Positions 7,932 through 61,507 of a DNA stretch of 64,000 bases are shown one piece after another. The notes under the pieces were generated by a model that was given only the letters and a program-made list of their open reading frames with translations, was not told the DNA's origin and made no database searches. The stretch lies in IMG/VR virus record IMGVR_UViG_3300019458_000021, positions 173,380 to 237,379 of that record, one strand, 5' to 3'. The position numbers were made by a program, and so were the translations under genes. Every line of letters begins with the position of its first letter. Position 1 is the first letter of the stretch.

Positions 7932-8860
7932 ACAAGGAACTATTGAACTATCTTCGTCATCTTTCCGAAGAAGACATCAAATCACTTTCACAGCGAGCTC
8001 TGAAAACGTGTGAAGAAGTTGGTGAGCTCGCTCGTGTTGTTTTGCCTTATGACGGAGCATATGCAACAAATCATCGTTTTGCGACCCGCGAGGATATTCT
8101 CGAAGAAGCTGTCGATACGGTGTTCTGTGCTTTATCAGTTGCTCATGCGCTTCAGTTTACCGACGAAGAAATTGAAGATATGATGTGGCTGAAAGCGGAA
8201 AAGTGGGCTCGACTGCAACACAACGAAAAGAACCTGAAATACCCAGTACCATTTGAGATTCATATTACTGTTGAACTGGATCCAATGATAGAAGATTCCG
8301 AGCGATTCAAAACAACATGCGCCGAGGCGAACGTAAAACCACTTGATCTCGTAACACAAACAAGAACGATCAAAGATGTGATGACATCATCAAAACATTT
8401 CGGAGACAATCGGTCGGCCTATGAAGAGATGAAACGAATTACTGGCCGTTTGATGGCAGCAGGATTCATGGTAGTTCGAGAAAAGATTGAAACTGTTTCT
8501 TGGCATCCAGCCGCTCCACAACACATCGGTGATGGTTCAAAAATGCCAGAGAATTGCTATTTTGAAAGTCATATTCCTGTTCGACTCCATCCAAATGATA
8601 TGGATATTCTTACTCGTCGTTGTAAGGAAATGGATCTACATCTTTCCCGAAATGGCTTTAAGACACACGAAGACGGTGACGTGACATACATGGCAACATA
8701 TCGAGTATATGAAGGCACCAATGAACAGTTCCGTGCATATGTAGATCAGGCCGTTCAATATCTTGACGCCCAGGAATACATCGTTGGAAAACCAATGAAC
8801 GAATTTAGCGTATATGATACGAAAGTGAGCCACGACGCAAAATGGCTGACCGGAAACTAA
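7928..8860 (+). CDS. MazG-like NTP pyrophosphohydrolase fused to an uncharacterised domain
   Basis: KTCEEVGELAR...EEAVD (EExxE...ExxD); the C-terminal part has repeated FEIHI/FESHI modules. Confidence 0.75.
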   Translation: MNKELLNYLRHLSEEDIKSLSQRALKTCEEVGELARVVLPYDGAYATNHRFATREDILEEAVDTVFCALSVAHALQFTDEEIEDMMWLKAEKWARLQHNEKNLKYPVPFEIHITVELDPMIEDSERFKTTCAEANVKPLDLVTQTRTIKDVMTSSKHFGDNRSAYEEMKRITGRLMAAGFMVVREKIETVSWHPAAPQHIGDGSKMPENCYFESHIPVRLHPNDMDILTRRCKEMDLHLSRNGFKTHEDGDVTYMATYRVYEGTNEQFRAYVDQAVQYLDAQEYIVGKPMNEFSVYDTKVSHDAKWLTGN

Positions 8861-40675: not shown

Positions 40676-41170
40676 TTACAAGAAGGTTGTGTGCTGCACA
40701 TGCACGCCAAGAAGGTTGTGTGCTGCACATGCACGCCAAAACAAATCAGCCATCAACGGTCCACCAATCTTCACTGACTGAGGTTTTTGCTTGAACTCGC
40801 TCCTAAACACGATTTCTGTTCCGATGAGATATTGGTACGTTAGCCGCTTGAACAATCTTCGTTCGCAGTCGAATCGCACGCGATGAATCACCGCATCGAC
40901 ATCACCATCATATCCTTCGGCATTCATTTTTCCGACGAGCTTGTAAGTGAGAAATGTGTCTTCTTCGTCGATTCGGTATGCATTGATATCGATGTAGTAT
41001 CGAGCTGTTTCAGGACCTTTGAAACGAACCCATACAGTCGTATTGCACACGCCTTTTTCGCAGATGTTTTGTTTGTGTGCATCTTCGAGAGGCATGTCGA
41101 CGATCGAATCATCTGCGAACGCAGTGGTGAATAGGAAGAGAAGACTGACGATGGCGTAGCGAAAATTCAT
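40676..41170 (-). CDS. Secreted hypothetical protein
   Basis: Signal-peptide-like N-terminus (..TTAFA-D). Confidence 0.65.
   Translation of the reverse strand: MNFRYAIVSLLFLFTTAFADDSIVDMPLEDAHKQNICEKGVCNTTVWVRFKGPETARYYIDINAYRIDEEDTFLTYKLVGKMNAEGYDGDVDAVIHRVRFDCERRLFKRLTYQYLIGTEIVFRSEFKQKPQSVKIGGPLMADLFWRACAAHNLLGVHVQHTTFL
40680..40737. repeat. Perfect 29-bp tandem duplication
   Basis: aagaaggttgtgtgctgcacatgcacgcc x2. Confidence 0.95.
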
Positions 41171-41209: not shown

Positions 41210-42256
41210 TTAACGTAAGCCCCCAGGAATTCCTTTTGAAACAACAGCCGTTGCTGACCAAGGATGAAGCGACTCAAGGTGTTCAGTAACAACACTGAAG
41301 TCTAGAATCTTACCCTCATCGTACATCATGTCAAGGCCTTGATACAACAGACGTGATGCATCCTCTGTGAACAGAAGGTTTGATCCGTTAAGCTCAGCGA
41401 ACGCTTGTTCATCACGCCGCTTACAGATTACAACAACTTCGGTTGGGACTTGACGACGAGCCACCTCTACAATATCTTCAATCCACACAACATGTTTGTC
41501 AGGATTAAACTGAACGGTGATTTTTCCGAGCGATCGTTGTGAGTGTCCGTTTGCAGCCTTACCGCGTTTGCGTGTTGCATGCTGCGCAAGTTCAAACGAA
41601 CATGGACAGGTTGAGGAATACAGATAGTCAACAGTCAGAAGGAATTTGTATGTGTCCCGTCCCGCTCTTAAATAAGGAGTATCCGTTACTTCTCTGTGCA
41701 ATTGACCTTCCAATGTGCAGTCATAGAAAATGTATCCAAGCATCTTGTCATGGCTCAGTTCTACTCCTTCGACTGTCTTGAATGTACGACCTAACGTTTT
41801 CTCTTCGTCCGAGGCCTCGCGTCTAGTTCGGAGCGCTGGCTGCGTCCAAGGATATTTGAAACGCAACTTACAATACACGTGCTTCGATCCTTGCTTTTCT
41901 TGAAGTCTTTTAAGAATCCCCTTCAAGCCGTCGAGTGAGAGATGATTTGCAATCTCTTCATGCATCAGGATTGGGAATCGAGACAGGTTTAATCCTTTGG
42001 CTTCTGGATTGTCCAGTGAACCATACAATGAAGCCTTTACATGTAGATTTTCGATGGAACCATCTCTGCGTAAAAACTTTATTGGAAGATCAACACCAGT
42101 CACACCAACCTTGTCCAGTCGTACCTTCGACCCTGGAATTACAGGATTGACTTGTGGGTCTGGAAGATCGCCGTCGTCTGGATAAAATTTGTCATCGTAT
42201 GTAAAGTCCAAGTGCGGCATGTGTGCACTGTAATCGTTATTTCGGAATTTGGTCAT
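41210..42256 (-). CDS. folE2: GTP cyclohydrolase type IB (FolE2)
   Basis: KGLNLSR, YSSTCPCS, HSQRS, KRRDEQAFAE, FTEDA.R, HLESLH. Confidence 0.9.
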   Translation of the reverse strand: MTKFRNNDYSAHMPHLDFTYDDKFYPDDGDLPDPQVNPVIPGSKVRLDKVGVTGVDLPIKFLRRDGSIENLHVKASLYGSLDNPEAKGLNLSRFPILMHEEIANHLSLDGLKGILKRLQEKQGSKHVYCKLRFKYPWTQPALRTRREASDEEKTLGRTFKTVEGVELSHDKMLGYIFYDCTLEGQLHREVTDTPYLRAGRDTYKFLLTVDYLYSSTCPCSFELAQHATRKRGKAANGHSQRSLGKITVQFNPDKHVVWIEDIVEVARRQVPTEVVVICKRRDEQAFAELNGSNLLFTEDASRLLYQGLDMMYDEGKILDFSVVTEHLESLHPWSATAVVSKGIPGGLR

Positions 42257-43971
42257 TATAACTCTCGTTGTTCATACGTTGCCAGTATTTGTGCATCTAT
42301 CATTTCTGCACGCAAATCTGCATCAAGTACATCAATGATATTCAGTCTGTTCGGCTGTGTCATCTGTGCGGTGAAATCATACATTGTGAGATCAACCATC
42401 CGTCCGTAGTGTTGGTTTACTGCAGCACGGTTGGGATCCATTACAATGGGGAATTTTCCACCTTTGACGTAGTATACAGCATCATAGCTTTGTTGAGCAC
42501 GAAGACATTTCATGTAGTACTCGTTTAAGTACTGATCGAAACGGTTTTCTCGACCAAGCCAAATCACAGCATAAGCAAAGAGGTCAGCATATGTTCTTTC
42601 AGTGAACACAACACCTGTTCGTCTTTGATATTTGCGATCGTTACTTGATGTGTGTAGCACTCTTTCTGCGTCATGCTCATCTTTGTATTTTCGAGCAAGA
42701 ATTTCGTTTTGGAATTTTACGACGAGATCGGGATCTTTAATGATGTCTTCAAGAGACATTCCCCACTCACTTTGAATTGACCGTGATGTTTTTCGTTCGA
42801 TTATGCGATAGCCTTTGGCCTCAAGTCTTTTTAGAATTGTTGTGTTGTGCGTAACGATGTAATCGTCCGTGATGTATAAATGTTCAGGATCGTCGATTGC
42901 TATACACCACACCTCTTCTTTACCTTTGTAAGTAATGTCTGAAATCCTGCGTGTGAGCAGTAAACTTCCGTTTTTGTGTCCTTCAAAGTGAGAGGAACGA
43001 CAACGATCTTTTTTTCTGGGGAGTGAAAATACACTAGAAGGATTTGGCAACTTTAGAGCAATTTCATATGCAATGAGACCACTGTGAAGCTTGTCTTTGT
43101 ACTTGTACACAGGGTGTCTTTCACTAATCGTTGCTACTCCGCCGAGCGACCAAACAATGTCCTGTACGTCTCTTGCGAGTGCATAACTAGTTGTGGTAAA
43201 CGTTGTAGAGGAGCCATTACTACTCACAGTTCCGTCTGTGTCCATCAACCCTTGAAGTAATTTCAGCCTATCGTTTGGTGGTCCATTTTTATATGCATTA
43301 GGAACAAACTTTTCTGGCGACTTTTTCATCAGATCGTAGTTCTCAAATGCACGTATATACTTGTTATTATGTTTTCCCTCATGACCAAGTCGATACGAGA
43401 TCGATGTACCTTGTTGAACAAAGTTATAACCAGAATCGAGTAACTTACTGCACTCATGTAAAATATGTGTATCTGTTGTTGTAAGAAGTACAGATTCCGA
43501 TGTTAAAGACCCGTCTCCAAGAAGACACCCCAACAAATAGGGAGGTATGTCATATTGATGATTATTGTCGTTCAAATATGGTGTAACCAGTGGTATTGAC
43601 AGATTTGTCCCCCACTGCTTTCTTGTTTTTTGTCTCTGCATGTAAGCACTCATGCTGAGTGTGGTCATTACTTCTTGTTTCAATCGATAAAATGATTTGT
43701 TGTTTTTTTTCGTGTATTGACCATACGAACACTTCCACAAATGATCTCCACACGCCTCTGTTTTCCCGCCATCGTGTGTGGTAATAATGTACACATCTTT
43801 CACACCTTGAGGGAAAATTCCAATGATAGGTGCAGAATGACCATTTGGTGTAATCACTCGATCTTTACAGGTAAGCTCCCCTATACACTTCCATCCTGTT
43901 TCACATAGTACTTTCGAGTGTAGAGGTTGAGCCTTGCCTGACCCCTGTGAGCCAGAAATTGCCACCAGCAT
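42256..43971 (-). CDS. P-loop nucleotide kinase/AAA-like protein interrupted by an intein
   Basis: After splicing: VAISGSQGSGK|TTIL...ERT..D. Confidence 0.8.
   Translation of the reverse strand: MLVAISGSQGSGKAQPLHSKVLCETGWKCIGELTCKDRVITPNGHSAPIIGIFPQGVKDVYIITTHDGGKTEACGDHLWKCSYGQYTKKNNKSFYRLKQEVMTTLSMSAYMQRQKTRKQWGTNLSIPLVTPYLNDNNHQYDIPPYLLGCLLGDGSLTSESVLLTTTDTHILHECSKLLDSGYNFVQQGTSISYRLGHEGKHNNKYIRAFENYDLMKKSPEKFVPNAYKNGPPNDRLKLLQGLMDTDGTVSSNGSSTTFTTTSYALARDVQDIVWSLGGVATISERHPVYKYKDKLHSGLIAYEIALKLPNPSSVFSLPRKKDRCRSSHFEGHKNGSLLLTRRISDITYKGKEEVWCIAIDDPEHLYITDDYIVTHNTTILKRLEAKGYRIIERKTSRSIQSEWGMSLEDIIKDPDLVVKFQNEILARKYKDEHDAERVLHTSSNDRKYQRRTGVVFTERTYADLFAYAVIWLGRENRFDQYLNEYYMKCLRAQQSYDAVYYVKGGKFPIVMDPNRAAVNQHYGRMVDLTMYDFTAQMTQPNRLNIIDVLDADLRAEMIDAQILATYEQREL
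42844..43932 (-). mobile_element. Class-3 intein (363 aa) with LAGLIDADG endonuclease
   Basis: Ala1 (AQPL), DHLW, VWCI, VTHN|T; LLGCLLGDG and LLQGLMDTDG. Confidence 0.9.
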
Positions 43972-44269: not shown

Positions 44270-44425
44270 TTACATGCCCTTGACAACAAACAACGTTTGC
44301 TCTAGGCAGGGGTCAACGAACAACCAACAAAGGTCTAAGTTTAAATCCCTGCAAACAATCGCAGTCCATGTTTTGTGATCTATTTTCTGCACCAGTTTGT
44401 GTGCAGCACGAAGTGTGAGTTCCAT
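44270..44425 (-). pseudogene. Truncated copy of the 45729-46307 gene
   Basis: MELTLRAAHKLV is identical, then the sequence diverges; the upstream cctcaactcaagga is shared. Confidence 0.65.
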
Positions 44426-44559: not shown

Positions 44560-44636
44560 TGGTCGGAGTGGCAGGATTTGAACCCGCGTCTTCCACGTCC
44601 CAAACGTGGCCGTCTACCAGACTGGCTTACACTCCG
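44560..44636 (-). tRNA. tRNA-Pro(UGG) #1
   Basis: CGGAGTG acceptor, ccacg-TT TGG GA-cgtgg anticodon arm, TTCAAAT T-loop, encoded CCA. Confidence 0.93.
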
Positions 44637-44639
44637 ATG

Positions 44640-44762
44640 GTCAAGTAACAACCAAACGAGACCAATCGTCTGTAGGTGTTTTGCTAATGGATTTAGTCGT
44701 TACCGACTTTTATCCCTTTTGCCGCACCCGTGCGAGCCGGAAATAGCTACGAGCATTGTTAT
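44640..44762 (-). ncRNA. Candidate structured RNA, copy A
   Basis: Core AAAAGTCGGTAACGACTAAATCCATTAGCAAAAC, shared with copy B; complementary ends. Confidence 0.45.
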
Positions 44763-44765
44763 CCT

Positions 44766-45476
44766 TTAGTCAATGTACGCGAAACGCGTCTCTAAGAGTG
44801 TTGGTCGTTGCACAACCGAGGTTAGAAATTTCAACGCTTCACCATTGCACATTTTATATCCGTATGATCCATATTTGACTGCCCGAGACAACGATGCGGC
44901 TGGAAACGTTAGTTTGTGAACTGCAAGTTTCTTATTGGCGATATCAAGCAATGTATAGTCCCCGACGATAATCGTCTCACCATCTGTTGCCAGCTGACAA
45001 ATCGTGTAATCGAAACTATCAAGTAAGTGTTCCACTGAGTCGTGGAAAAAATCACCGTGAATCAGCTGAATGTTGTACTTGTTTTTGTCTTCGGTGAAGT
45101 CAAAATTTGTAACGTGGCTAGTTTCGAGCGTTTTTGTAAACAATCGCTTGTTATCTTTTAGACGAAGAACAGGAAAAAGAACAGGAAAGATATTGTCCGC
45201 AATCTCATCCACACCTGATCCTTCAATCATACGGTGTTGAAAGATTTCATGTTGGTCTGCATTTTTGAAGAAGATGTCGAAGTCAGTTTCACACGATTTT
45301 CCTTCAACAGCTTGCCGCAGACATCCGCCGCCAAGCCAAGGACCATTCTCCAACGAAAATTCAACAGCTGTTTGGCGTTGCAAACTACCAAGCAGATGCT
45401 CGATATGTGCAACGATGCTGGTTACCTTGTTTGGATGTAAGTGTTGAATTAGTTCGTATAGTGGATATTTGATCAT
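44766..45476 (-). CDS. Nucleotidyltransferase (CCA/poly(A) polymerase head-like)
   Basis: GGGCLR, DFDIFF, SFDYTICQ. Confidence 0.7.
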   Translation of the reverse strand: MIKYPLYELIQHLHPNKVTSIVAHIEHLLGSLQRQTAVEFSLENGPWLGGGCLRQAVEGKSCETDFDIFFKNADQHEIFQHRMIEGSGVDEIADNIFPVLFPVLRLKDNKRLFTKTLETSHVTNFDFTEDKNKYNIQLIHGDFFHDSVEHLLDSFDYTICQLATDGETIIVGDYTLLDIANKKLAVHKLTFPAASLSRAVKYGSYGYKMCNGEALKFLTSVVQRPTLLETRFAYID

Positions 45477-45661
45477 ACGAAAATCATAGAGGAGCGGAGT
45501 AAAAAGTTCAACAGAACCGTGACAATCCCTCAATCCTTCAACCAGCAATACGGTCTTGCGAGCCCAATCCTTCAACCAGCAAAATAGGGTTAATTGTATG
45601 GCTCGCCTTCAATGACCAATCCATCAGCTGTATGAGGTTTAGACCTCGATCTTACGCTGAA

Positions 45662-45687
45662 CATCTCACCAGCAAGCTGGTGAGATG
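45662..45687. other. Perfect hairpin downstream of the 45729 gene
   Basis: catctcaccagc-aa-gctggtgagatg. Confidence 0.6.
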
Positions 45688-45728
45688 ACGTTGTAAGGTG
45701 GTTTGTCTCCCTTCTTACTCGCGCCGCC

Positions 45729-46307
45729 TCAAATCAGCTTCTCGTCCGACAGAACAATAACGTGAGTCTGTGGTAGCACGAGAGTGTTCGCAAGATTCTT
45801 GTGAAGAAGCGCATCTTCGATGGTTTCTGCTTGGCGACGGTATCCAGCAATCTCATGCTCCATACGTTCACGATTGCTGATGAGCGAGAAGTTCACGACA
45901 TCAGCACGATAGCTCTCACCAGCGGCTTCTTGGGCGCGCGCGATTTGACGTTGAAGGGCTTCTGGTGTTGACACATACTGCTCACGAAGGACAGACACGA
46001 GCCGTCCCAATAGCTGAGCACGATCAACAACATCTTTGCGTTCTGAGACAAGTTGGTTGATCCCTTCGCGCTCATTGATTGCGCGAATGGTGTCGCGAAT
46101 AAACGTGCGGATAGTCATCAGATCTTCAACGCGAGCGATCTTGTCTTCGAATTCTTGCATCCGATCTTGGTACAGGTGTTCGACAACGTCGCTATCATTA
46201 TCAACGTCAAACACGTTGATCGTAGCGATTGGGTTGATTTGGATTGCGTGGATTTGTTGGGTGATCTTGTCAACCAACTTGTGTGCAGCACGGAGGGTCA
46301 GTTCCAT
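45729..46307 (-). CDS. Coiled-coil hypothetical protein
   Basis: ATG after an AGGAG RBS. Confidence 0.75.
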   Translation of the reverse strand: MELTLRAAHKLVDKITQQIHAIQINPIATINVFDVDNDSDVVEHLYQDRMQEFEDKIARVEDLMTIRTFIRDTIRAINEREGINQLVSERKDVVDRAQLLGRLVSVLREQYVSTPEALQRQIARAQEAAGESYRADVVNFSLISNRERMEHEIAGYRRQAETIEDALLHKNLANTLVLPQTHVIVLSDEKLI

Positions 46308-46348
46308 GAAATGTTCTCCTTGAGTTGAGGGATTGTATCCTACAAGGG

Positions 46349-46615
46349 TCAATGAAGTTCGACAACAGCGTATCGAGTTTTTTCAAGCAACTCGTCAAAC
46401 GCGGCGTTAACAGTAGTGCTGTCTAGACGGAAACCAGCTCCTTCTTGTGGTCGTCCGTCATCGTCACAAGGCACACAATACATGCCGTTTCGACCTTCCA
46501 TTACTGTAAAGCCAAACAATGCAATCAGGCGCTTTTTTGCTGTCAACAGACAATCGACGTTGTCAAGGACGAGTTGGTCCTCTTCAAAATCAAGGTTCGT
46601 TGCTAGGTACTTCAT
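46349..46615 (-). CDS. Hypothetical protein
   Basis: 88-aa ORF. Confidence 0.6.
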   Translation of the reverse strand: MKYLATNLDFEEDQLVLDNVDCLLTAKKRLIALFGFTVMEGRNGMYCVPCDDDGRPQEGAGFRLDSTTVNAAFDELLEKTRYAVVELH

Positions 46616-46636
46616 CGTGTGTTTTCTTCGTATCGC

Positions 46637-46876
46637 TCACGAAGCGTTGGTTGGTCCATTATCTTCTCGAATAATTGTTAGAGCCTGCGATTTCTGAAGA
46701 TCAGGCAGAAGACCTTCAGACACTGTTAGGCGCCACGTTCCGTCGGCAAGTGGGTCGAAGTGGAGAAATTCATTCTGGATCTTTAGAATCGTAAACCTTG
46801 AGATCTCTATTGTACGACCTGTTCCTTCAAAACGAAACGTTCGACGAACGTTATTGGCCATACTTAAGTACCACAC
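46637..46876 (-). CDS. Hypothetical protein
   Basis: 79-aa ORF; start uncertain. Confidence 0.5.
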   Translation of the reverse strand: MWYLSMANNVRRTFRFEGTGRTIEISRFTILKIQNEFLHFDPLADGTWRLTVSEGLLPDLQKSQALTIIREDNGPTNAS

Positions 46877-46996
46877 GGCACTTCGAACAAATGAAGCACC
46901 ACATCTTCTTGATTAGTTCTCCAACGTGGCCACATTGGTGGCATTTGACCGTGTTTTGATCTTGCGTCACCATTTGACGCCTCTTTTGCATGAATA

Positions 46997-47073
46997 TGGT
47001 CGGCGATGGAGGATTTGAACCTCCGGCCTCTTGCTCCCAAAGCAAGCAGTCTACCAGGCTGACCTAATCGCCG
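46997..47073 (-). tRNA. tRNA-Pro(UGG) #2
   Basis: CGGCGAT acceptor, cttgc-TT TGG GA-gcaag, TTCAAAT, CCA. Confidence 0.92.
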
Positions 47074-47177
47074 AAACGTTCTTGAAATTCACAGCGTGTA
47101 CTGCAGCGGCTTAGGCTCCCAATCGTAGCGATCTACTTGTGCACTTTCGATCTACCTTCGCTTGTTTCAAGAGTTTC

Positions 47178-47301
47178 AAACAACAACCAAATCAGGATCA
47201 ATGATTTGTGGACGTTTTGCTTACGGATATAGCCGTTACCGACTTTTTCGTCCGTTCGCTAAGGACGTGTCTTACTTCACCCTAGGAGGTCCATTGTTGT
47301 T
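47178..47301 (-). ncRNA. Candidate structured RNA, copy B
   Basis: Core AAAAGTCGGTAACGGCTATATCCGTAAGCAAAAC; terminal stem AACAACAAT/GTTGTTGTT. Confidence 0.45.
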
Positions 47302-47375
47302 TGGTGGAGGATGAGAGAGTCGAACTCTCGAGTACGCCGTGCAAAGGCGTCAGTTTCCCACTAGCTTAATCCCCC
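47302..47375 (-). tRNA. tRNA-Ala(UGC)
   Basis: GGGGGAT/ATCCTCC acceptor with G3:U70, acgcc-TT TGC AC-ggcgt, TTCGA, CCA. Confidence 0.92.
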
Positions 47376-47490
47376 AAGGTCCATATTCCAGCATGTAATG
47401 ACAAATTGCACATAAGACTACACACTTTTCAATTTCTTGCCTAAGTTTCTCAAACGCTATGAACCAGCGTGAAGAAACAGCAAATTCTCC
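47376..47490 (-). pseudogene. HNH endonuclease remnant
   Basis: Translates to FEKLRQEIEKCVVLCAICH, with no start or 5' part. Confidence 0.6.
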
Positions 47491-47583
47491 TATTTAAGGA
47501 GAGTGTAAAGCGAATTCGGGTCTGCCGCCTCCACCAGTTAGTTTTACGAAACTAACAAACTATTTAGGGATGTTACAGAAATA

Positions 47584-49150: not shown

Positions 49151-49501
49151 CTATGCGGAGAAGGAGGACCCGCATCCACATGTTGAAGTAGCATTCGGAT
49201 TGTGAATAGTGAATTGAGCGCCATTGAGATCTTCAAGATACTCAATAGTGGCACCAAGAAGATATTGAAAGCTCATCGGATCAACCAAGAACTTCACGCC
49301 GTCCTTTTCGATCACGGTATCGTCGTCAGCGATCTCTTTATCGAGCGTGAATCCATACTGGAAGCCGGAACAGCCTCCGCCTTGAACGAACACGCGAAGC
49401 ATCAAGGAAGGATCCCCTTCTTCGGCGATCACTTCCTTGATTTTGTTAACAGAGGTAGGTGTAAATGTTATGAGATCCATATCTGTATTTATGAGATCCA
49501 T
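49151..49501 (-). CDS. erpA: Fe-S cluster insertion protein ErpA/IscA
   Basis: [31 protein letters not shown]. Confidence 0.93.
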
Positions 49502-49509
49502 ATCTGTAT
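49468..49509. repeat. Perfect 21-bp tandem duplication at the erpA start
   Basis: ttatgagatccatatctgtat x2. Confidence 0.95.
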
Positions 49510-60275: not shown

Positions 60276-60358
60276 GGGTATTGTACGCCGATCGGACTTA
60301 GTTGGCAACTACATCTCGCCAGCCGTCCGTTTCTCGCAGGCTAGTCGTTCTTTCTGGA
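60276..60358. repeat. ~83-bp direct repeat, copy 1 (gene end plus promoter)
   Basis: Nearly identical to 61424-61507. Confidence 0.95.
60280..60308 (-). promoter_or_regulatory. sigma70-like early promoter
   Basis: TTGCCA-N17-TACAAT. Confidence 0.7.
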
Positions 60359-61423: not shown

Positions 61424-61507
61424 GGGTATTGTACGCCGATCGGACTTAGTTGGCAACTTACATCTCGCCAGCCGTCCGTTTCTCGCAGGCTAGTCGCTCC
61501 TTCTGGA
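61424..61507. repeat. ~83-bp direct repeat, copy 2 (includes TTGCCA-N17-TACAAT on the minus strand)
   Basis: Nearly identical to 60276-60358. Confidence 0.95.

What the first reader, a model, noticed from the sequence alone, without database searches (positions are those of the whole stretch)
44640..47301. Two copies of an unrecognised ~120-nt structured RNA in the tRNA cluster
Seen (minus strand): both 44640-44762 and 47178-47301 read AACAATG...GGA..AAAAGTCG-GTAA-CG(A/G)CTA(A/T)ATCC(A/G)T(T/A)AGCAAAAC...TTTGGTTGTT. They share a GNRA-capped hairpin with a pairing-preserving U-A/U-G change, a GGA/TCC stem and complementary ends. Copy B starts right after the tRNA-Ala CCA; copy A ends in CCA just before tRNA-Pro. 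Inferred: a processed ncRNA family (ribozyme, decoy or processing element). I cannot assign it to a known family.
Basis: partly seen in the sequence, partly recalled or inferred. Interest (0 to 1): 0.72.

Follow-up and report, generated by a model that had tools for sequence, protein, structure and literature searches.

The report
Cloverleaf-shaped RNA beside phage tRNA genes

Summary
The repeat is real. A 34-nt core occurs twice in the window, against 0 expected by chance.

Copy B (47179-47301, minus strand) is a full-length element of about 123 nt. It starts at the base after the CCA of tRNA-Ala. A related phage contig (L118) has a full-length ortholog in the same position, between tRNA-Ala and tRNA-Pro. 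It is 77% identical, while neighbouring proteins are only 46-55% identical.

B and this ortholog fold into the same four-helix cloverleaf. Eleven substitutions fall in paired positions, and 31 of 32 pairs survive (P about 1e-5).

There is no Rfam match even at E 10, no coding signal, and no other homolog in any collection I searched.

Copy A is only partly homologous. Its 3' part of about 80 nt matches B. Its 5' part of about 45 nt is the in-place head (13 codons) of the resident AAA_28 P-loop gene, cut exactly where the neighbouring copy of that gene carries its intein. Three relatives have Gad2-like, intein-less AAA_28 and FolE2 genes directly adjacent. So copy A arrived inside a block of about 750 bp inserted at the intein homing site.

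The CCA at the end of copy A is not conserved.

Most likely this is a small structured RNA made and cut out together with the tRNAs, like T4 RNA C and RNA D. Its function is unknown, and neither transcription nor processing was tested.

The parts
47179..47301 (-). Copy B: the full-length element (about 123 nt) with four helices. P1 pairs 47293-47301 with 47179-47187. P2 pairs 47289-47292 with 47263-47266; its loop holds the invariant GAAGUAAG. P3 is in three tiers: 47258-47259 with 47219-47220, 47251-47255 with 47223-47227, and 47240-47244 with 47231-47235, capped by the GUAA loop at 47236-47239. P4 pairs 47202-47208 with 47188-47194.
   Evidence: (145.9 bits). It starts at the base after the tRNA-Ala CCA.
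44641..44722 (-). Copy A, the homologous 3' part. It holds P3 (hairpin 44695-44708), the single-stranded AGCAAAAC, P4 (44653-44672) and the 3' strand of P1 (44646-44652).
   Evidence: 82.6 bits. All 15 pairs are kept against copy B despite 16 substitutions (P=0.0012).
44718..44766 (-). Copy A, the 5' part, which is not homologous to B or C. It is the Shine-Dalgarno sequence AAGGA plus the relic head (13 codons, MLVAISGSHGCGK) of the resident AAA_28 gene, ending at the GK codon where the intein is inserted in the neighbouring copy. The mini-ORF runs on to a UAA inside the GUAA loop (44700-44756).
   Evidence: Synteny.
47302..47375 (-). tRNA-Ala(UGC) with an encoded CCA, abutting copy B.
   Evidence: The same arrangement is seen in L118.
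46997..47073 (-). tRNA-Pro(UGG), 105 nt downstream of copy B.
44560..44636 (-). A second, divergent tRNA-Pro(UGG), 72% identical to the other one. It starts 9 nt after the last P1 base of copy A (44646).
44381..44425 (-). Relic head (about 15 codons) of a second copy of the 192-aa gene at 45729-46307. It belongs to the inserted block.
   Evidence: The differences are mostly at third codon positions.
42256..43971 (-). AAA_28 P-loop gene carrying a LAGLIDADG intein (about 42844-43932), inserted between GSGK and TTIL.
44766..45575 (-). Gad2-like nucleotidyltransferase gene. Its stop codon lies within the Shine-Dalgarno sequence of the relic gene head.
   Evidence: (PF26128, precomputed).

Best explanation
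The element is a gene for a small structured RNA of about 123 nt with a cloverleaf layout.
- P1 is a 9-bp closing helix.
- P2 is a 4-bp arm with a large loop.
- P3 is a long arm capped by a GUAA tetraloop.
- A single-stranded stretch of about 10 nt follows P3.
- P4 is a 7-bp arm with a 7-nt loop that runs straight into the 3' strand of P1.

It lies on the tRNA strand, starting at the base after the CCA of tRNA-Ala and upstream of tRNA-Pro.

Shown: the sequence and all four helices are conserved between two phages, and the 3' domain is also conserved in a second copy.

Inferred: it is transcribed in the tRNA precursor and cut out by the tRNA-processing enzymes. A cut at its 5' end would at the same stroke make the mature CCA end of tRNA-Ala. 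The stacked P1 and P4 helices resemble the acceptor/T-arm helix that RNase P reads. The product would be a stable small RNA, like T4 RNA C and RNA D, acting through its fold. What it acts on is unknown.

Copy A is a rearranged copy. A block of about 750 bp was copied into the resident AAA_28 gene at the intein homing site. The block holds the 3' two-thirds of an element, a tRNA-Pro, a relic gene head, a 66-aa ORF and an intein-bearing AAA_28 gene. The join is at GGCAAA/AGC-AA-like microhomology, and the old 13-codon gene head was left as the new 5' part of copy A.
For: Ortholog:
- L118 positions 8446-8570 lie directly after tRNA-Ala and before tRNA-Pro. The match scores 71.7 bits with a model built without it.
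- It is 77% identical to B over 127 aligned columns. Neighbouring proteins are only 46-55% identical.

Structure:
- RNAalifold on an unbiased MAFFT alignment of B and C predicts P1-P4, with 4 compensatory pairs and none broken.
- Of 27 substitutions, 11 lie in paired columns, yet 31 of 32 pairs stay canonical. P is about 1e-5 under random placement.
- With three sequences, 96.9% of cells are paired and 8 pairs change on both sides. None of 500 shuffles reaches this, and slid controls give 22-50% paired.
- A versus B alone gives P=0.0012.

Strand: the G-U pairs work only on the minus strand, and the minus-strand folds are more stable.

Not coding: no frame shows a synonymous bias, and most frames have stops.

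Copy A history:
- Gad2-like, intein-less AAA_28 and FolE2 are adjacent in L118 and L123. AAA_28 and FolE2 are also adjacent in L122.
- The stump is a true AAA_28 head.

Precedent: T4 RNA C and RNA D lie in its tRNA cluster and their roles are unknown (PMC3014915; PMC9697503).
Against: - There is no transcript evidence: no RNA run was listed.
- Only two phage lineages carry it. The nearest cultured jumbo phages and every collection I scanned gave nothing.
- Single-sequence folding is only mildly better than shuffles (z -1.8 to -2.0).
- The P4 loop does not match the tRNA T-loop consensus. P1 plus P4 stack to 16 bp, not the 12 bp of a tRNA. No CCA follows P1 in B or C. RNase P recognition is therefore conjecture.
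- In copy A a well-placed Shine-Dalgarno sequence and an 18-codon ORF run through P1, P2 and half of P3, so ribosomes could unfold it. Copy A may be non-functional.
- The three-sequence pair counts use an alignment fitted to the model.
Confidence: 0.6

Rival explanations
1. It is a cis-acting processing or spacer module rather than a stable trans-acting RNA. The fold exists only within the precursor, where it positions nucleases that finish the 3' end of tRNA-Ala and the 5' end of tRNA-Pro, and it is then degraded.
For: - It starts exactly at the tRNA-Ala CCA in both phages.
- It always lies upstream of a tRNA-Pro.
- A-rich single-stranded stretches lie beside hairpins.
Against: - The distance to tRNA-Pro varies widely: 9 nt after the last P1 base in copy A, 105 nt after copy B, and about 195 nt in L118.
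- Copy A has no upstream tRNA.
- A simple spacer would not need four helices conserved with covariation, nor an invariant 8-nt loop motif.
Confidence: 0.22
2. It is a degenerate derivative of a tRNA gene, that is a tRNA pseudogene or an extreme tRNA-like gene. It keeps only the cloverleaf outline and is conserved by linkage.
For: - It has cloverleaf topology, a 4-bp second arm, a 7-nt loop on the last arm and no gap between the last arm and the closing helix.
- The genome holds other odd, short tRNA-like hits.
Against: - The Rfam tRNA model gives no match even at E 10 on the isolated copies, and ARAGORN finds nothing.
- There is no T-loop or D-loop consensus, a GNRA tetraloop replaces the anticodon loop, and P1 has 9 bp.
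- It is 77% identical between phages whose tRNA-Ala genes differ much more by my own reading (identity not computed). That, together with the compensatory changes, argues for selection on this particular fold.
Confidence: 0.08
3. It is a weak intrinsic terminator or attenuator. P4 followed by UUUGGUUGUU would end or modulate transcription ahead of tRNA-Pro.
For: The consensus scan flags P4 of copy A as terminator-like (44672-44653).
Against: - P4 of copy B is not flagged, having only 2 G-C pairs.
- The U-rich tail is the paired 3' strand of P1.
- A terminator 9 nt before a tRNA gene that has no room for its own promoter makes little sense.
- This does not explain P1-P3.
Confidence: 0.04
4. It is a DNA-level relic or mobile repeat linked to the intein homing site, with no RNA function. 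Its ends are inverted copies of the sequence just 3' of the AAA_28 intein insertion point.
For: - The first 9 nt of copy B (AACAACAAT) equal the 9 nt after the GK codon in intein-less AAA_28 genes of L118 and L122 (p about 0.04).
- Copy A is joined to that gene exactly at the insertion point.
Against: - The match is short and of low complexity.
- There are no target-site duplications and only three copies in all searched data.
- Neutral DNA between these phages has lost all similarity, whereas the element keeps 77% identity with compensatory pairs.
Confidence: 0.05

Closest known systems
Bacteriophage T4 RNA C (species 1) and RNA D (species 2)
   Same: These are non-tRNA small RNAs of 119-139 nt, encoded on the tRNA strand inside the phage tRNA cluster directly after a tRNA. 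RNA C ends in a tRNA-like T arm plus a closing helix. Their function is still unknown (PMC3014915, PMC9697503).
   Different: I saw no sequence similarity when reading the sequences side by side. The helix layouts differ. T4 RNA C has a canonical GGUUCGAAUCC T arm, whereas this element does not.
tRNA (Rfam RF00005)
   Same: The element shares the four-arm cloverleaf order and a 4-bp second arm. Its last arm has a 7-nt loop and abuts the 3' strand of the closing helix. It sits in a tRNA array.
   Different: There is no model match, no anticodon loop (a GUAA tetraloop instead) and no T-loop or D-loop consensus. The helices are 9 bp and 7 bp, and no CCA or discriminator is conserved.
tRNA-like domains of tmRNA and bacterial or phage Y-RNA-like RNAs (YrlA)
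   Same: In these RNAs the 5' and 3' ends pair to form a closing helix that stacks on a T-arm-like hairpin, and the rest of the RNA replaces the anticodon arm. This comparison is from my own knowledge.
   Different: ARAGORN finds no tmRNA. No Rfam match to tmRNA or Y RNA families appears at E 10. No tag ORF or Ro-binding helix is evident.

Membership tests
tRNA (RF00005 / ARAGORN) | A score above threshold against the tRNA covariance model, or detection by ARAGORN. | tested here: not met
   Only the three flanking tRNAs are found. There is no tRNA hit on the isolated copies at E up to 10.
tRNA (RF00005 / ARAGORN) | A 7-nt anticodon loop, the T-loop UUCRANY and an encoded or added 3' CCA. | tested here: not met
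   The P3 loop is GUAA. The P4 loops are UUGAUCC, CUAGUCC and UUGGUC. A CCA is present only after copy A.
Phage tRNA-cluster small stable RNAs (T4 RNA C / RNA D type) | Encoded within the tRNA cluster on the tRNA strand, adjacent to a tRNA, and not itself a tRNA. | tested here: met
Phage tRNA-cluster small stable RNAs (T4 RNA C / RNA D type) | Accumulates as a discrete stable RNA processed from the tRNA precursor. | not testable with these tools
   No RNA run was listed. The only holders are cave metagenome DNA runs.
Phage tRNA-cluster small stable RNAs (T4 RNA C / RNA D type) | Sequence or structure homology to T4 rnaC or rnaD. | tested here: not met
   I compared the sequences and folds by eye and found no shared motif beyond a terminal helix. 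No alignment or model search against the T4 genes was run.
Self-cleaving ribozymes and other Rfam families | A match to any of the 4227 Rfam covariance models. | tested here: not met
   The gathering-threshold scan finds nothing. At E up to 10 on the isolated copies, only two chance hits appear on the opposite strand.
Conserved structured RNA (generic) | Orthologs in another genome with compensatory base changes in the predicted helices. | tested here: met
   (P about 1e-5). Only 3 sequences are available, so this is not R-scape grade.
Decayed coding repeat | An open frame or a synonymous-biased substitution pattern shared by the copies. | tested here: not met
   For the shared 3' domain no frame qualifies. 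The feature is met only for the 5' 39 nt of copy A, which is an AAA_28 gene head.
Intrinsic terminator | A G+C-rich hairpin followed by an unpaired U tract in all copies. | tested here: not met
   Only copy A is flagged. The tail is the 3' strand of P1.

The most novel reading that the evidence does not exclude
The element is a new class of phage tRNA mimic with a working role.
- One possibility is that it is an RNase P substrate whose excision sets the 3' CCA end of tRNA-Ala.
- Another is that it is a decoy that soaks up a host tRNA-targeting defence nuclease or a tRNA-modifying enzyme. It sits in an accessory arm next to a Gad2-like anti-defence nucleotidyltransferase and a macro-domain gene.
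- The rearranged copy A was kept because the chimeric 5' part still closes P1 and P2. Only 5 of 388 gene heads of this genome could do as well.
Probability: 0.15. Interest if true: 0.7.

Novelty: new variant of a known kind. Interest (0 to 1): 0.47.

Why it matters
Non-tRNA small RNAs inside phage tRNA clusters have been known since T4 RNA C and RNA D, yet their function has stayed unknown for about 50 years. This second, unrelated, covariation-supported example is shaped like a tRNA and butted against a tRNA 3' end. It gives an independent system for asking what such RNAs do: processing aid, decoy or scaffold.

The locus also preserves an unusually legible scar. A gene head was left behind exactly at an intein insertion point, with the intein-bearing gene and extra cargo (a tRNA and most of the RNA element) copied in downstream. 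This suggests that intein homing can drag neighbouring genes into a new genome by one-sided repair.

Tried and rejected
- **Rfam.** The gathering scan of the window, an E-value scan of the 3.4-kb region, and scans of each copy alone all found no family.
- **BLAST against INPHARED phages.** I searched the region and each copy. Only tRNA-Pro and chance hits came back.
- **Pattern scans.**
  - IMG/VR. One search used a mistyped pattern and is void.
  - JGI metagenomes.
  - GTDB genomes.
  - These returned only the same phage (two cave assemblies) plus chance matches. One tempting hit, L090, lies inside a dnaB ORF.
- **nhmmer and covariance models R1 and R2.** I ran them on the own genome, on parts of the 351-kb ENA contig of the same phage, on four related jumbo phages and on all fetched loci. 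No further copy appeared.
- **Protein walks.** Relatives of the Gad2-like gene in IMG/VR (L004, L005) have no tRNAs or element. Homologs of the 192-aa gene (L122-L125) lack the upstream region or lack tRNAs. The search with ORF93 found only itself.
- **Coding hypothesis** for the shared domain: rejected.
- **Plus-strand RNA:** rejected, because the G-U pairs would become A-C mismatches and the folds are weaker.
- **Descent of the 5' third of B and C from an AAA_28 gene head:** not significant (p 0.04-0.8). Left open.
- **Homology to T4 rnaC or rnaD:** none seen.
- **RNA-seq evidence:** no run was listed.
Full report
**What the window is**

The window is the last 64 kb of a 237,379-bp virus record, and CheckV rates that record 68% complete. 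The record was assembled from a cave metagenome. A 351,809-bp ENA contig of the same phage exists. The large terminase is 40-50% identical to those of the jumbo phages Xanthomonas XacN1, Xoo-sp13, Stenotrophomonas RAS14 and Ralstonia RsoM2USA. The record holds 30 tRNA genes, and the longer contig holds more.

**Checking the observation**

- Both stretches read on the minus strand as described.
- The shared 34-nt core occurs exactly twice, against 0 expected by chance.
- Each copy folds into a multi-helix structure with a GUAA-capped hairpin, a GGA/UCC stem and paired ends. The energies are only about 2 SD better than shuffles.
- tRNA-Ala (47302-47375) abuts copy B. Copy A is followed by CCA, one U, and then tRNA-Pro.
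- No Rfam family matches, even at E 10 on the isolated copies.

**The two copies are not equivalent**

Similarity between A and B covers only the 3' part of about 80 nt. The 5' part of copy A reads AAGGA, a short spacer, then ATG and 13 codons: MLVAISGSHGCGK.

That is the N-terminus of the neighbouring AAA_28 P-loop gene (42256-43971). The neighbouring gene carries a LAGLIDADG intein inserted right after GSGK. The two 39-nt heads differ at 9 bases, 8 of them third codon positions. So the stump diverged while it was a working gene.

Downstream of each copy lie a tRNA-Pro(UGG) and the start of a 192-aa gene. The two tRNA-Pro genes are only 72% identical to each other. The gene is intact after copy B. 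After copy A it is truncated to about 15 codons, again with mostly third-position differences.

**The related phage settles both questions**

A 55%-identical homolog of the Gad2-like nucleotidyltransferase that precedes copy A lies on a 21.9-kb ENA contig, L118. Gene order there is:

- macro-domain gene
- ORF93 homolog
- tRNA-Ala
- a third copy of the element, starting at the base after the CCA
- tRNA-Pro
- the 192-aa gene
- the Gad2-like gene
- an intein-less AAA_28 gene of 200 aa, starting 9 nt after the Gad2-like stop
- FolE2

L123 also has Gad2-like and intein-less AAA_28 adjacent. L122 has intein-less AAA_28 next to FolE2. Two conclusions follow.

1. Copy B has a full-length ortholog in the same position. 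It is 77% identical over 127 aligned columns, including the 5' third. Neighbouring proteins are only 46-55% identical.
2. The gene head in copy A sits exactly where the resident AAA_28 gene should start. A block of about 750 bp now separates it from the rest of the gene. The block holds the 3' two-thirds of an element, a tRNA-Pro, the relic head of the 192-aa gene, a 66-aa ORF, and a new N-extein with its intein. The break falls at the intein insertion point.

I read this as repair of a homing-endonuclease cut that copied extra donor sequence on one side. That reading is inference. The stump and the synteny are observed.

**Evidence for RNA structure**

- RNAalifold on a plain MAFFT alignment of B and the L118 copy predicts four helices: P1 (9 bp, closing), P2 (4 bp), P3 (2+5+4/5 bp, GUAA loop) and P4 (7 bp, 7-nt loop, abutting the P1 3' strand). 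Four pairs change on both sides and none is broken.
- Of 27 substitutions, 11 fall in paired columns, yet 31 of 32 pairs remain canonical. Random placement achieves this in about 1 of 100,000 trials.
- A versus B in the 3' domain has 16 substitutions, 6 of them in stems, and all 15 pairs are kept (P=0.0012).
- On the three-sequence alignment, 96.9% of cells are paired and 8 pairs change on both sides. None of 500 shuffles reaches this, and slid controls fall to 22-50%. That alignment is fitted to the model.
- G-U pairs occur in P1, P3 and P4, so the transcribed strand is the tRNA strand. The opposite strand folds less well.
- No reading frame shows a coding signature in the shared domain.

**Shape**

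The order is: closing helix, short arm, long arm, about 10 unpaired bases, last arm, then back into the closing helix. That is the order of a tRNA cloverleaf. In detail the element is not a tRNA:

- a GNRA tetraloop stands where the anticodon loop would be
- there are no T-loop or D-loop signatures
- the helices have 9 bp and 7 bp
- no CCA is conserved
- the tRNA models do not match

**Mechanism, mostly inferred**

The element lies inside a non-coding array on the tRNA strand: a promoter-like site at 47612-47583, a weak wcaG-like hit, tRNA-Ala, the element, a spacer, then tRNA-Pro. In two phages its first base follows the tRNA-Ala CCA.

The most economical reading is co-transcription with the tRNAs and excision by the tRNA-processing enzymes. 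A cut at its 5' end would create the mature 3' end of tRNA-Ala. The stacked P1 and P4 helices could serve as the acceptor/T-arm mimic that RNase P reads.

T4 RNA C and RNA D are the positional precedent, and their roles are still unknown. What the RNA does once made is open.

**Status of copy A**

Copy A keeps P3, P4 and the P1 3' strand intact. Its foreign 5' part can still close P1 (8 of 9 pairs) and a 4-bp P2 in register. Only 5 of 388 gene heads of this genome could do as well. This hints that a foldable recombinant was favoured. However, a good Shine-Dalgarno sequence and an 18-codon ORF run through those strands, so copy A may be impaired.

**Distribution**

Every other search found nothing. 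I scanned IMG/VR, JGI metagenomes and GTDB genomes by pattern. I searched INPHARED by BLAST. I searched related jumbo phages and all fetched loci with the covariance models. The family is so far known from two uncultured phage lineages only.

**Verdict**

This is a real, selected, structured RNA element of a new family, of a kind already known: a non-tRNA RNA inside a phage tRNA cluster. Function and processing remain untested.

Noticed in passing
window 47469-47564 (-): A weak match to the wcaG RNA motif (RF01761): 26.3 bits against a gathering score of 42, E=0.0036 on the 265-nt stretch. It lies in the 208-nt non-coding leader upstream of tRNA-Ala. The leader is absent from the relative L118, where only 50 nt precede tRNA-Ala.
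   Followed up: partly
window 42256-43971 (-) and G000:C1:31631-33487 (+): There are two related LAGLIDADG inteins (39% identity over 394 aa). The first is inserted right after the Walker-A GK of the AAA_28 gene, and the second appears to sit after the GK of another 618-aa P-loop protein. Relatives L118, L122 and L123 carry the AAA_28 gene without an intein.
   Followed up: partly
window 47293-47301 (-); L118 10727 onward; L122 1720 onward: The first 9 nt of copy B (AACAACAAT, the P1 5' strand) are identical to the 9 nt that follow the intein insertion point in intein-less AAA_28 genes (AA ACA ACA AT). The sequence is of low complexity and p is about 0.04, so this may be coincidence.
   Followed up: partly
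G000:C1 11782-11809, 13065-13092, 14350-14377 (minus strand; locus L008): This is a second family of short conserved non-coding repeats in the main tRNA cluster, GTTGCGCAGTA-N-GTTACTTCA: a small hairpin with a variable loop. Two of the three copies begin within 4 nt of the 3' end of a tRNA gene, and the copies are spaced about 1284 nt apart.
   Followed up: partly
window 60276-60358 and 61424-61507: An 84-nt direct repeat that is nearly identical (96-100%), spaced 1148 nt apart. There are also exact tandem duplications of 29 nt (40679-40736) and 21 nt (49468-49509).
   Followed up: no
window 45483-45511 (-); L040 about 880-935: A sigma-70-like promoter (TTGAAC, 17 nt, TATGAT/TATAAT) is conserved in the relative. 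It ends only about 6 nt before an in-frame ATG of the Gad2-like gene (45482), which suggests a leaderless or near-leaderless mRNA.
   Followed up: no
G000:C1 (whole record); L008 6709-6770, 11642-11703, 14227-14291: There are five very divergent tRNA-Pro(UGG) genes (56-72% identical to each other). A sixth tRNA-Pro-like stretch and short tRNA-like Rfam hits (62-65 nt) were not called by ARAGORN.
   Followed up: partly
L114 (ENA contig of 351,809 bp, 240066-260491); L116, L117: The genome record behind the window is incomplete. The longer contig continues past its start with at least 7 more tRNA genes, then an AAA ATPase and NAD-salvage genes. No further copy of the element occurs in the roughly 20 kb I inspected.
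   Followed up: partly
window 47074-47130 (-); L118 about 8690-8762: A second conserved non-coding block, containing CTGCAGTACACGYTGTG, lies just upstream of tRNA-Pro in both phages. The tRNA-Pro itself looks nearly identical between them by eye, with about two differences.
   Followed up: no
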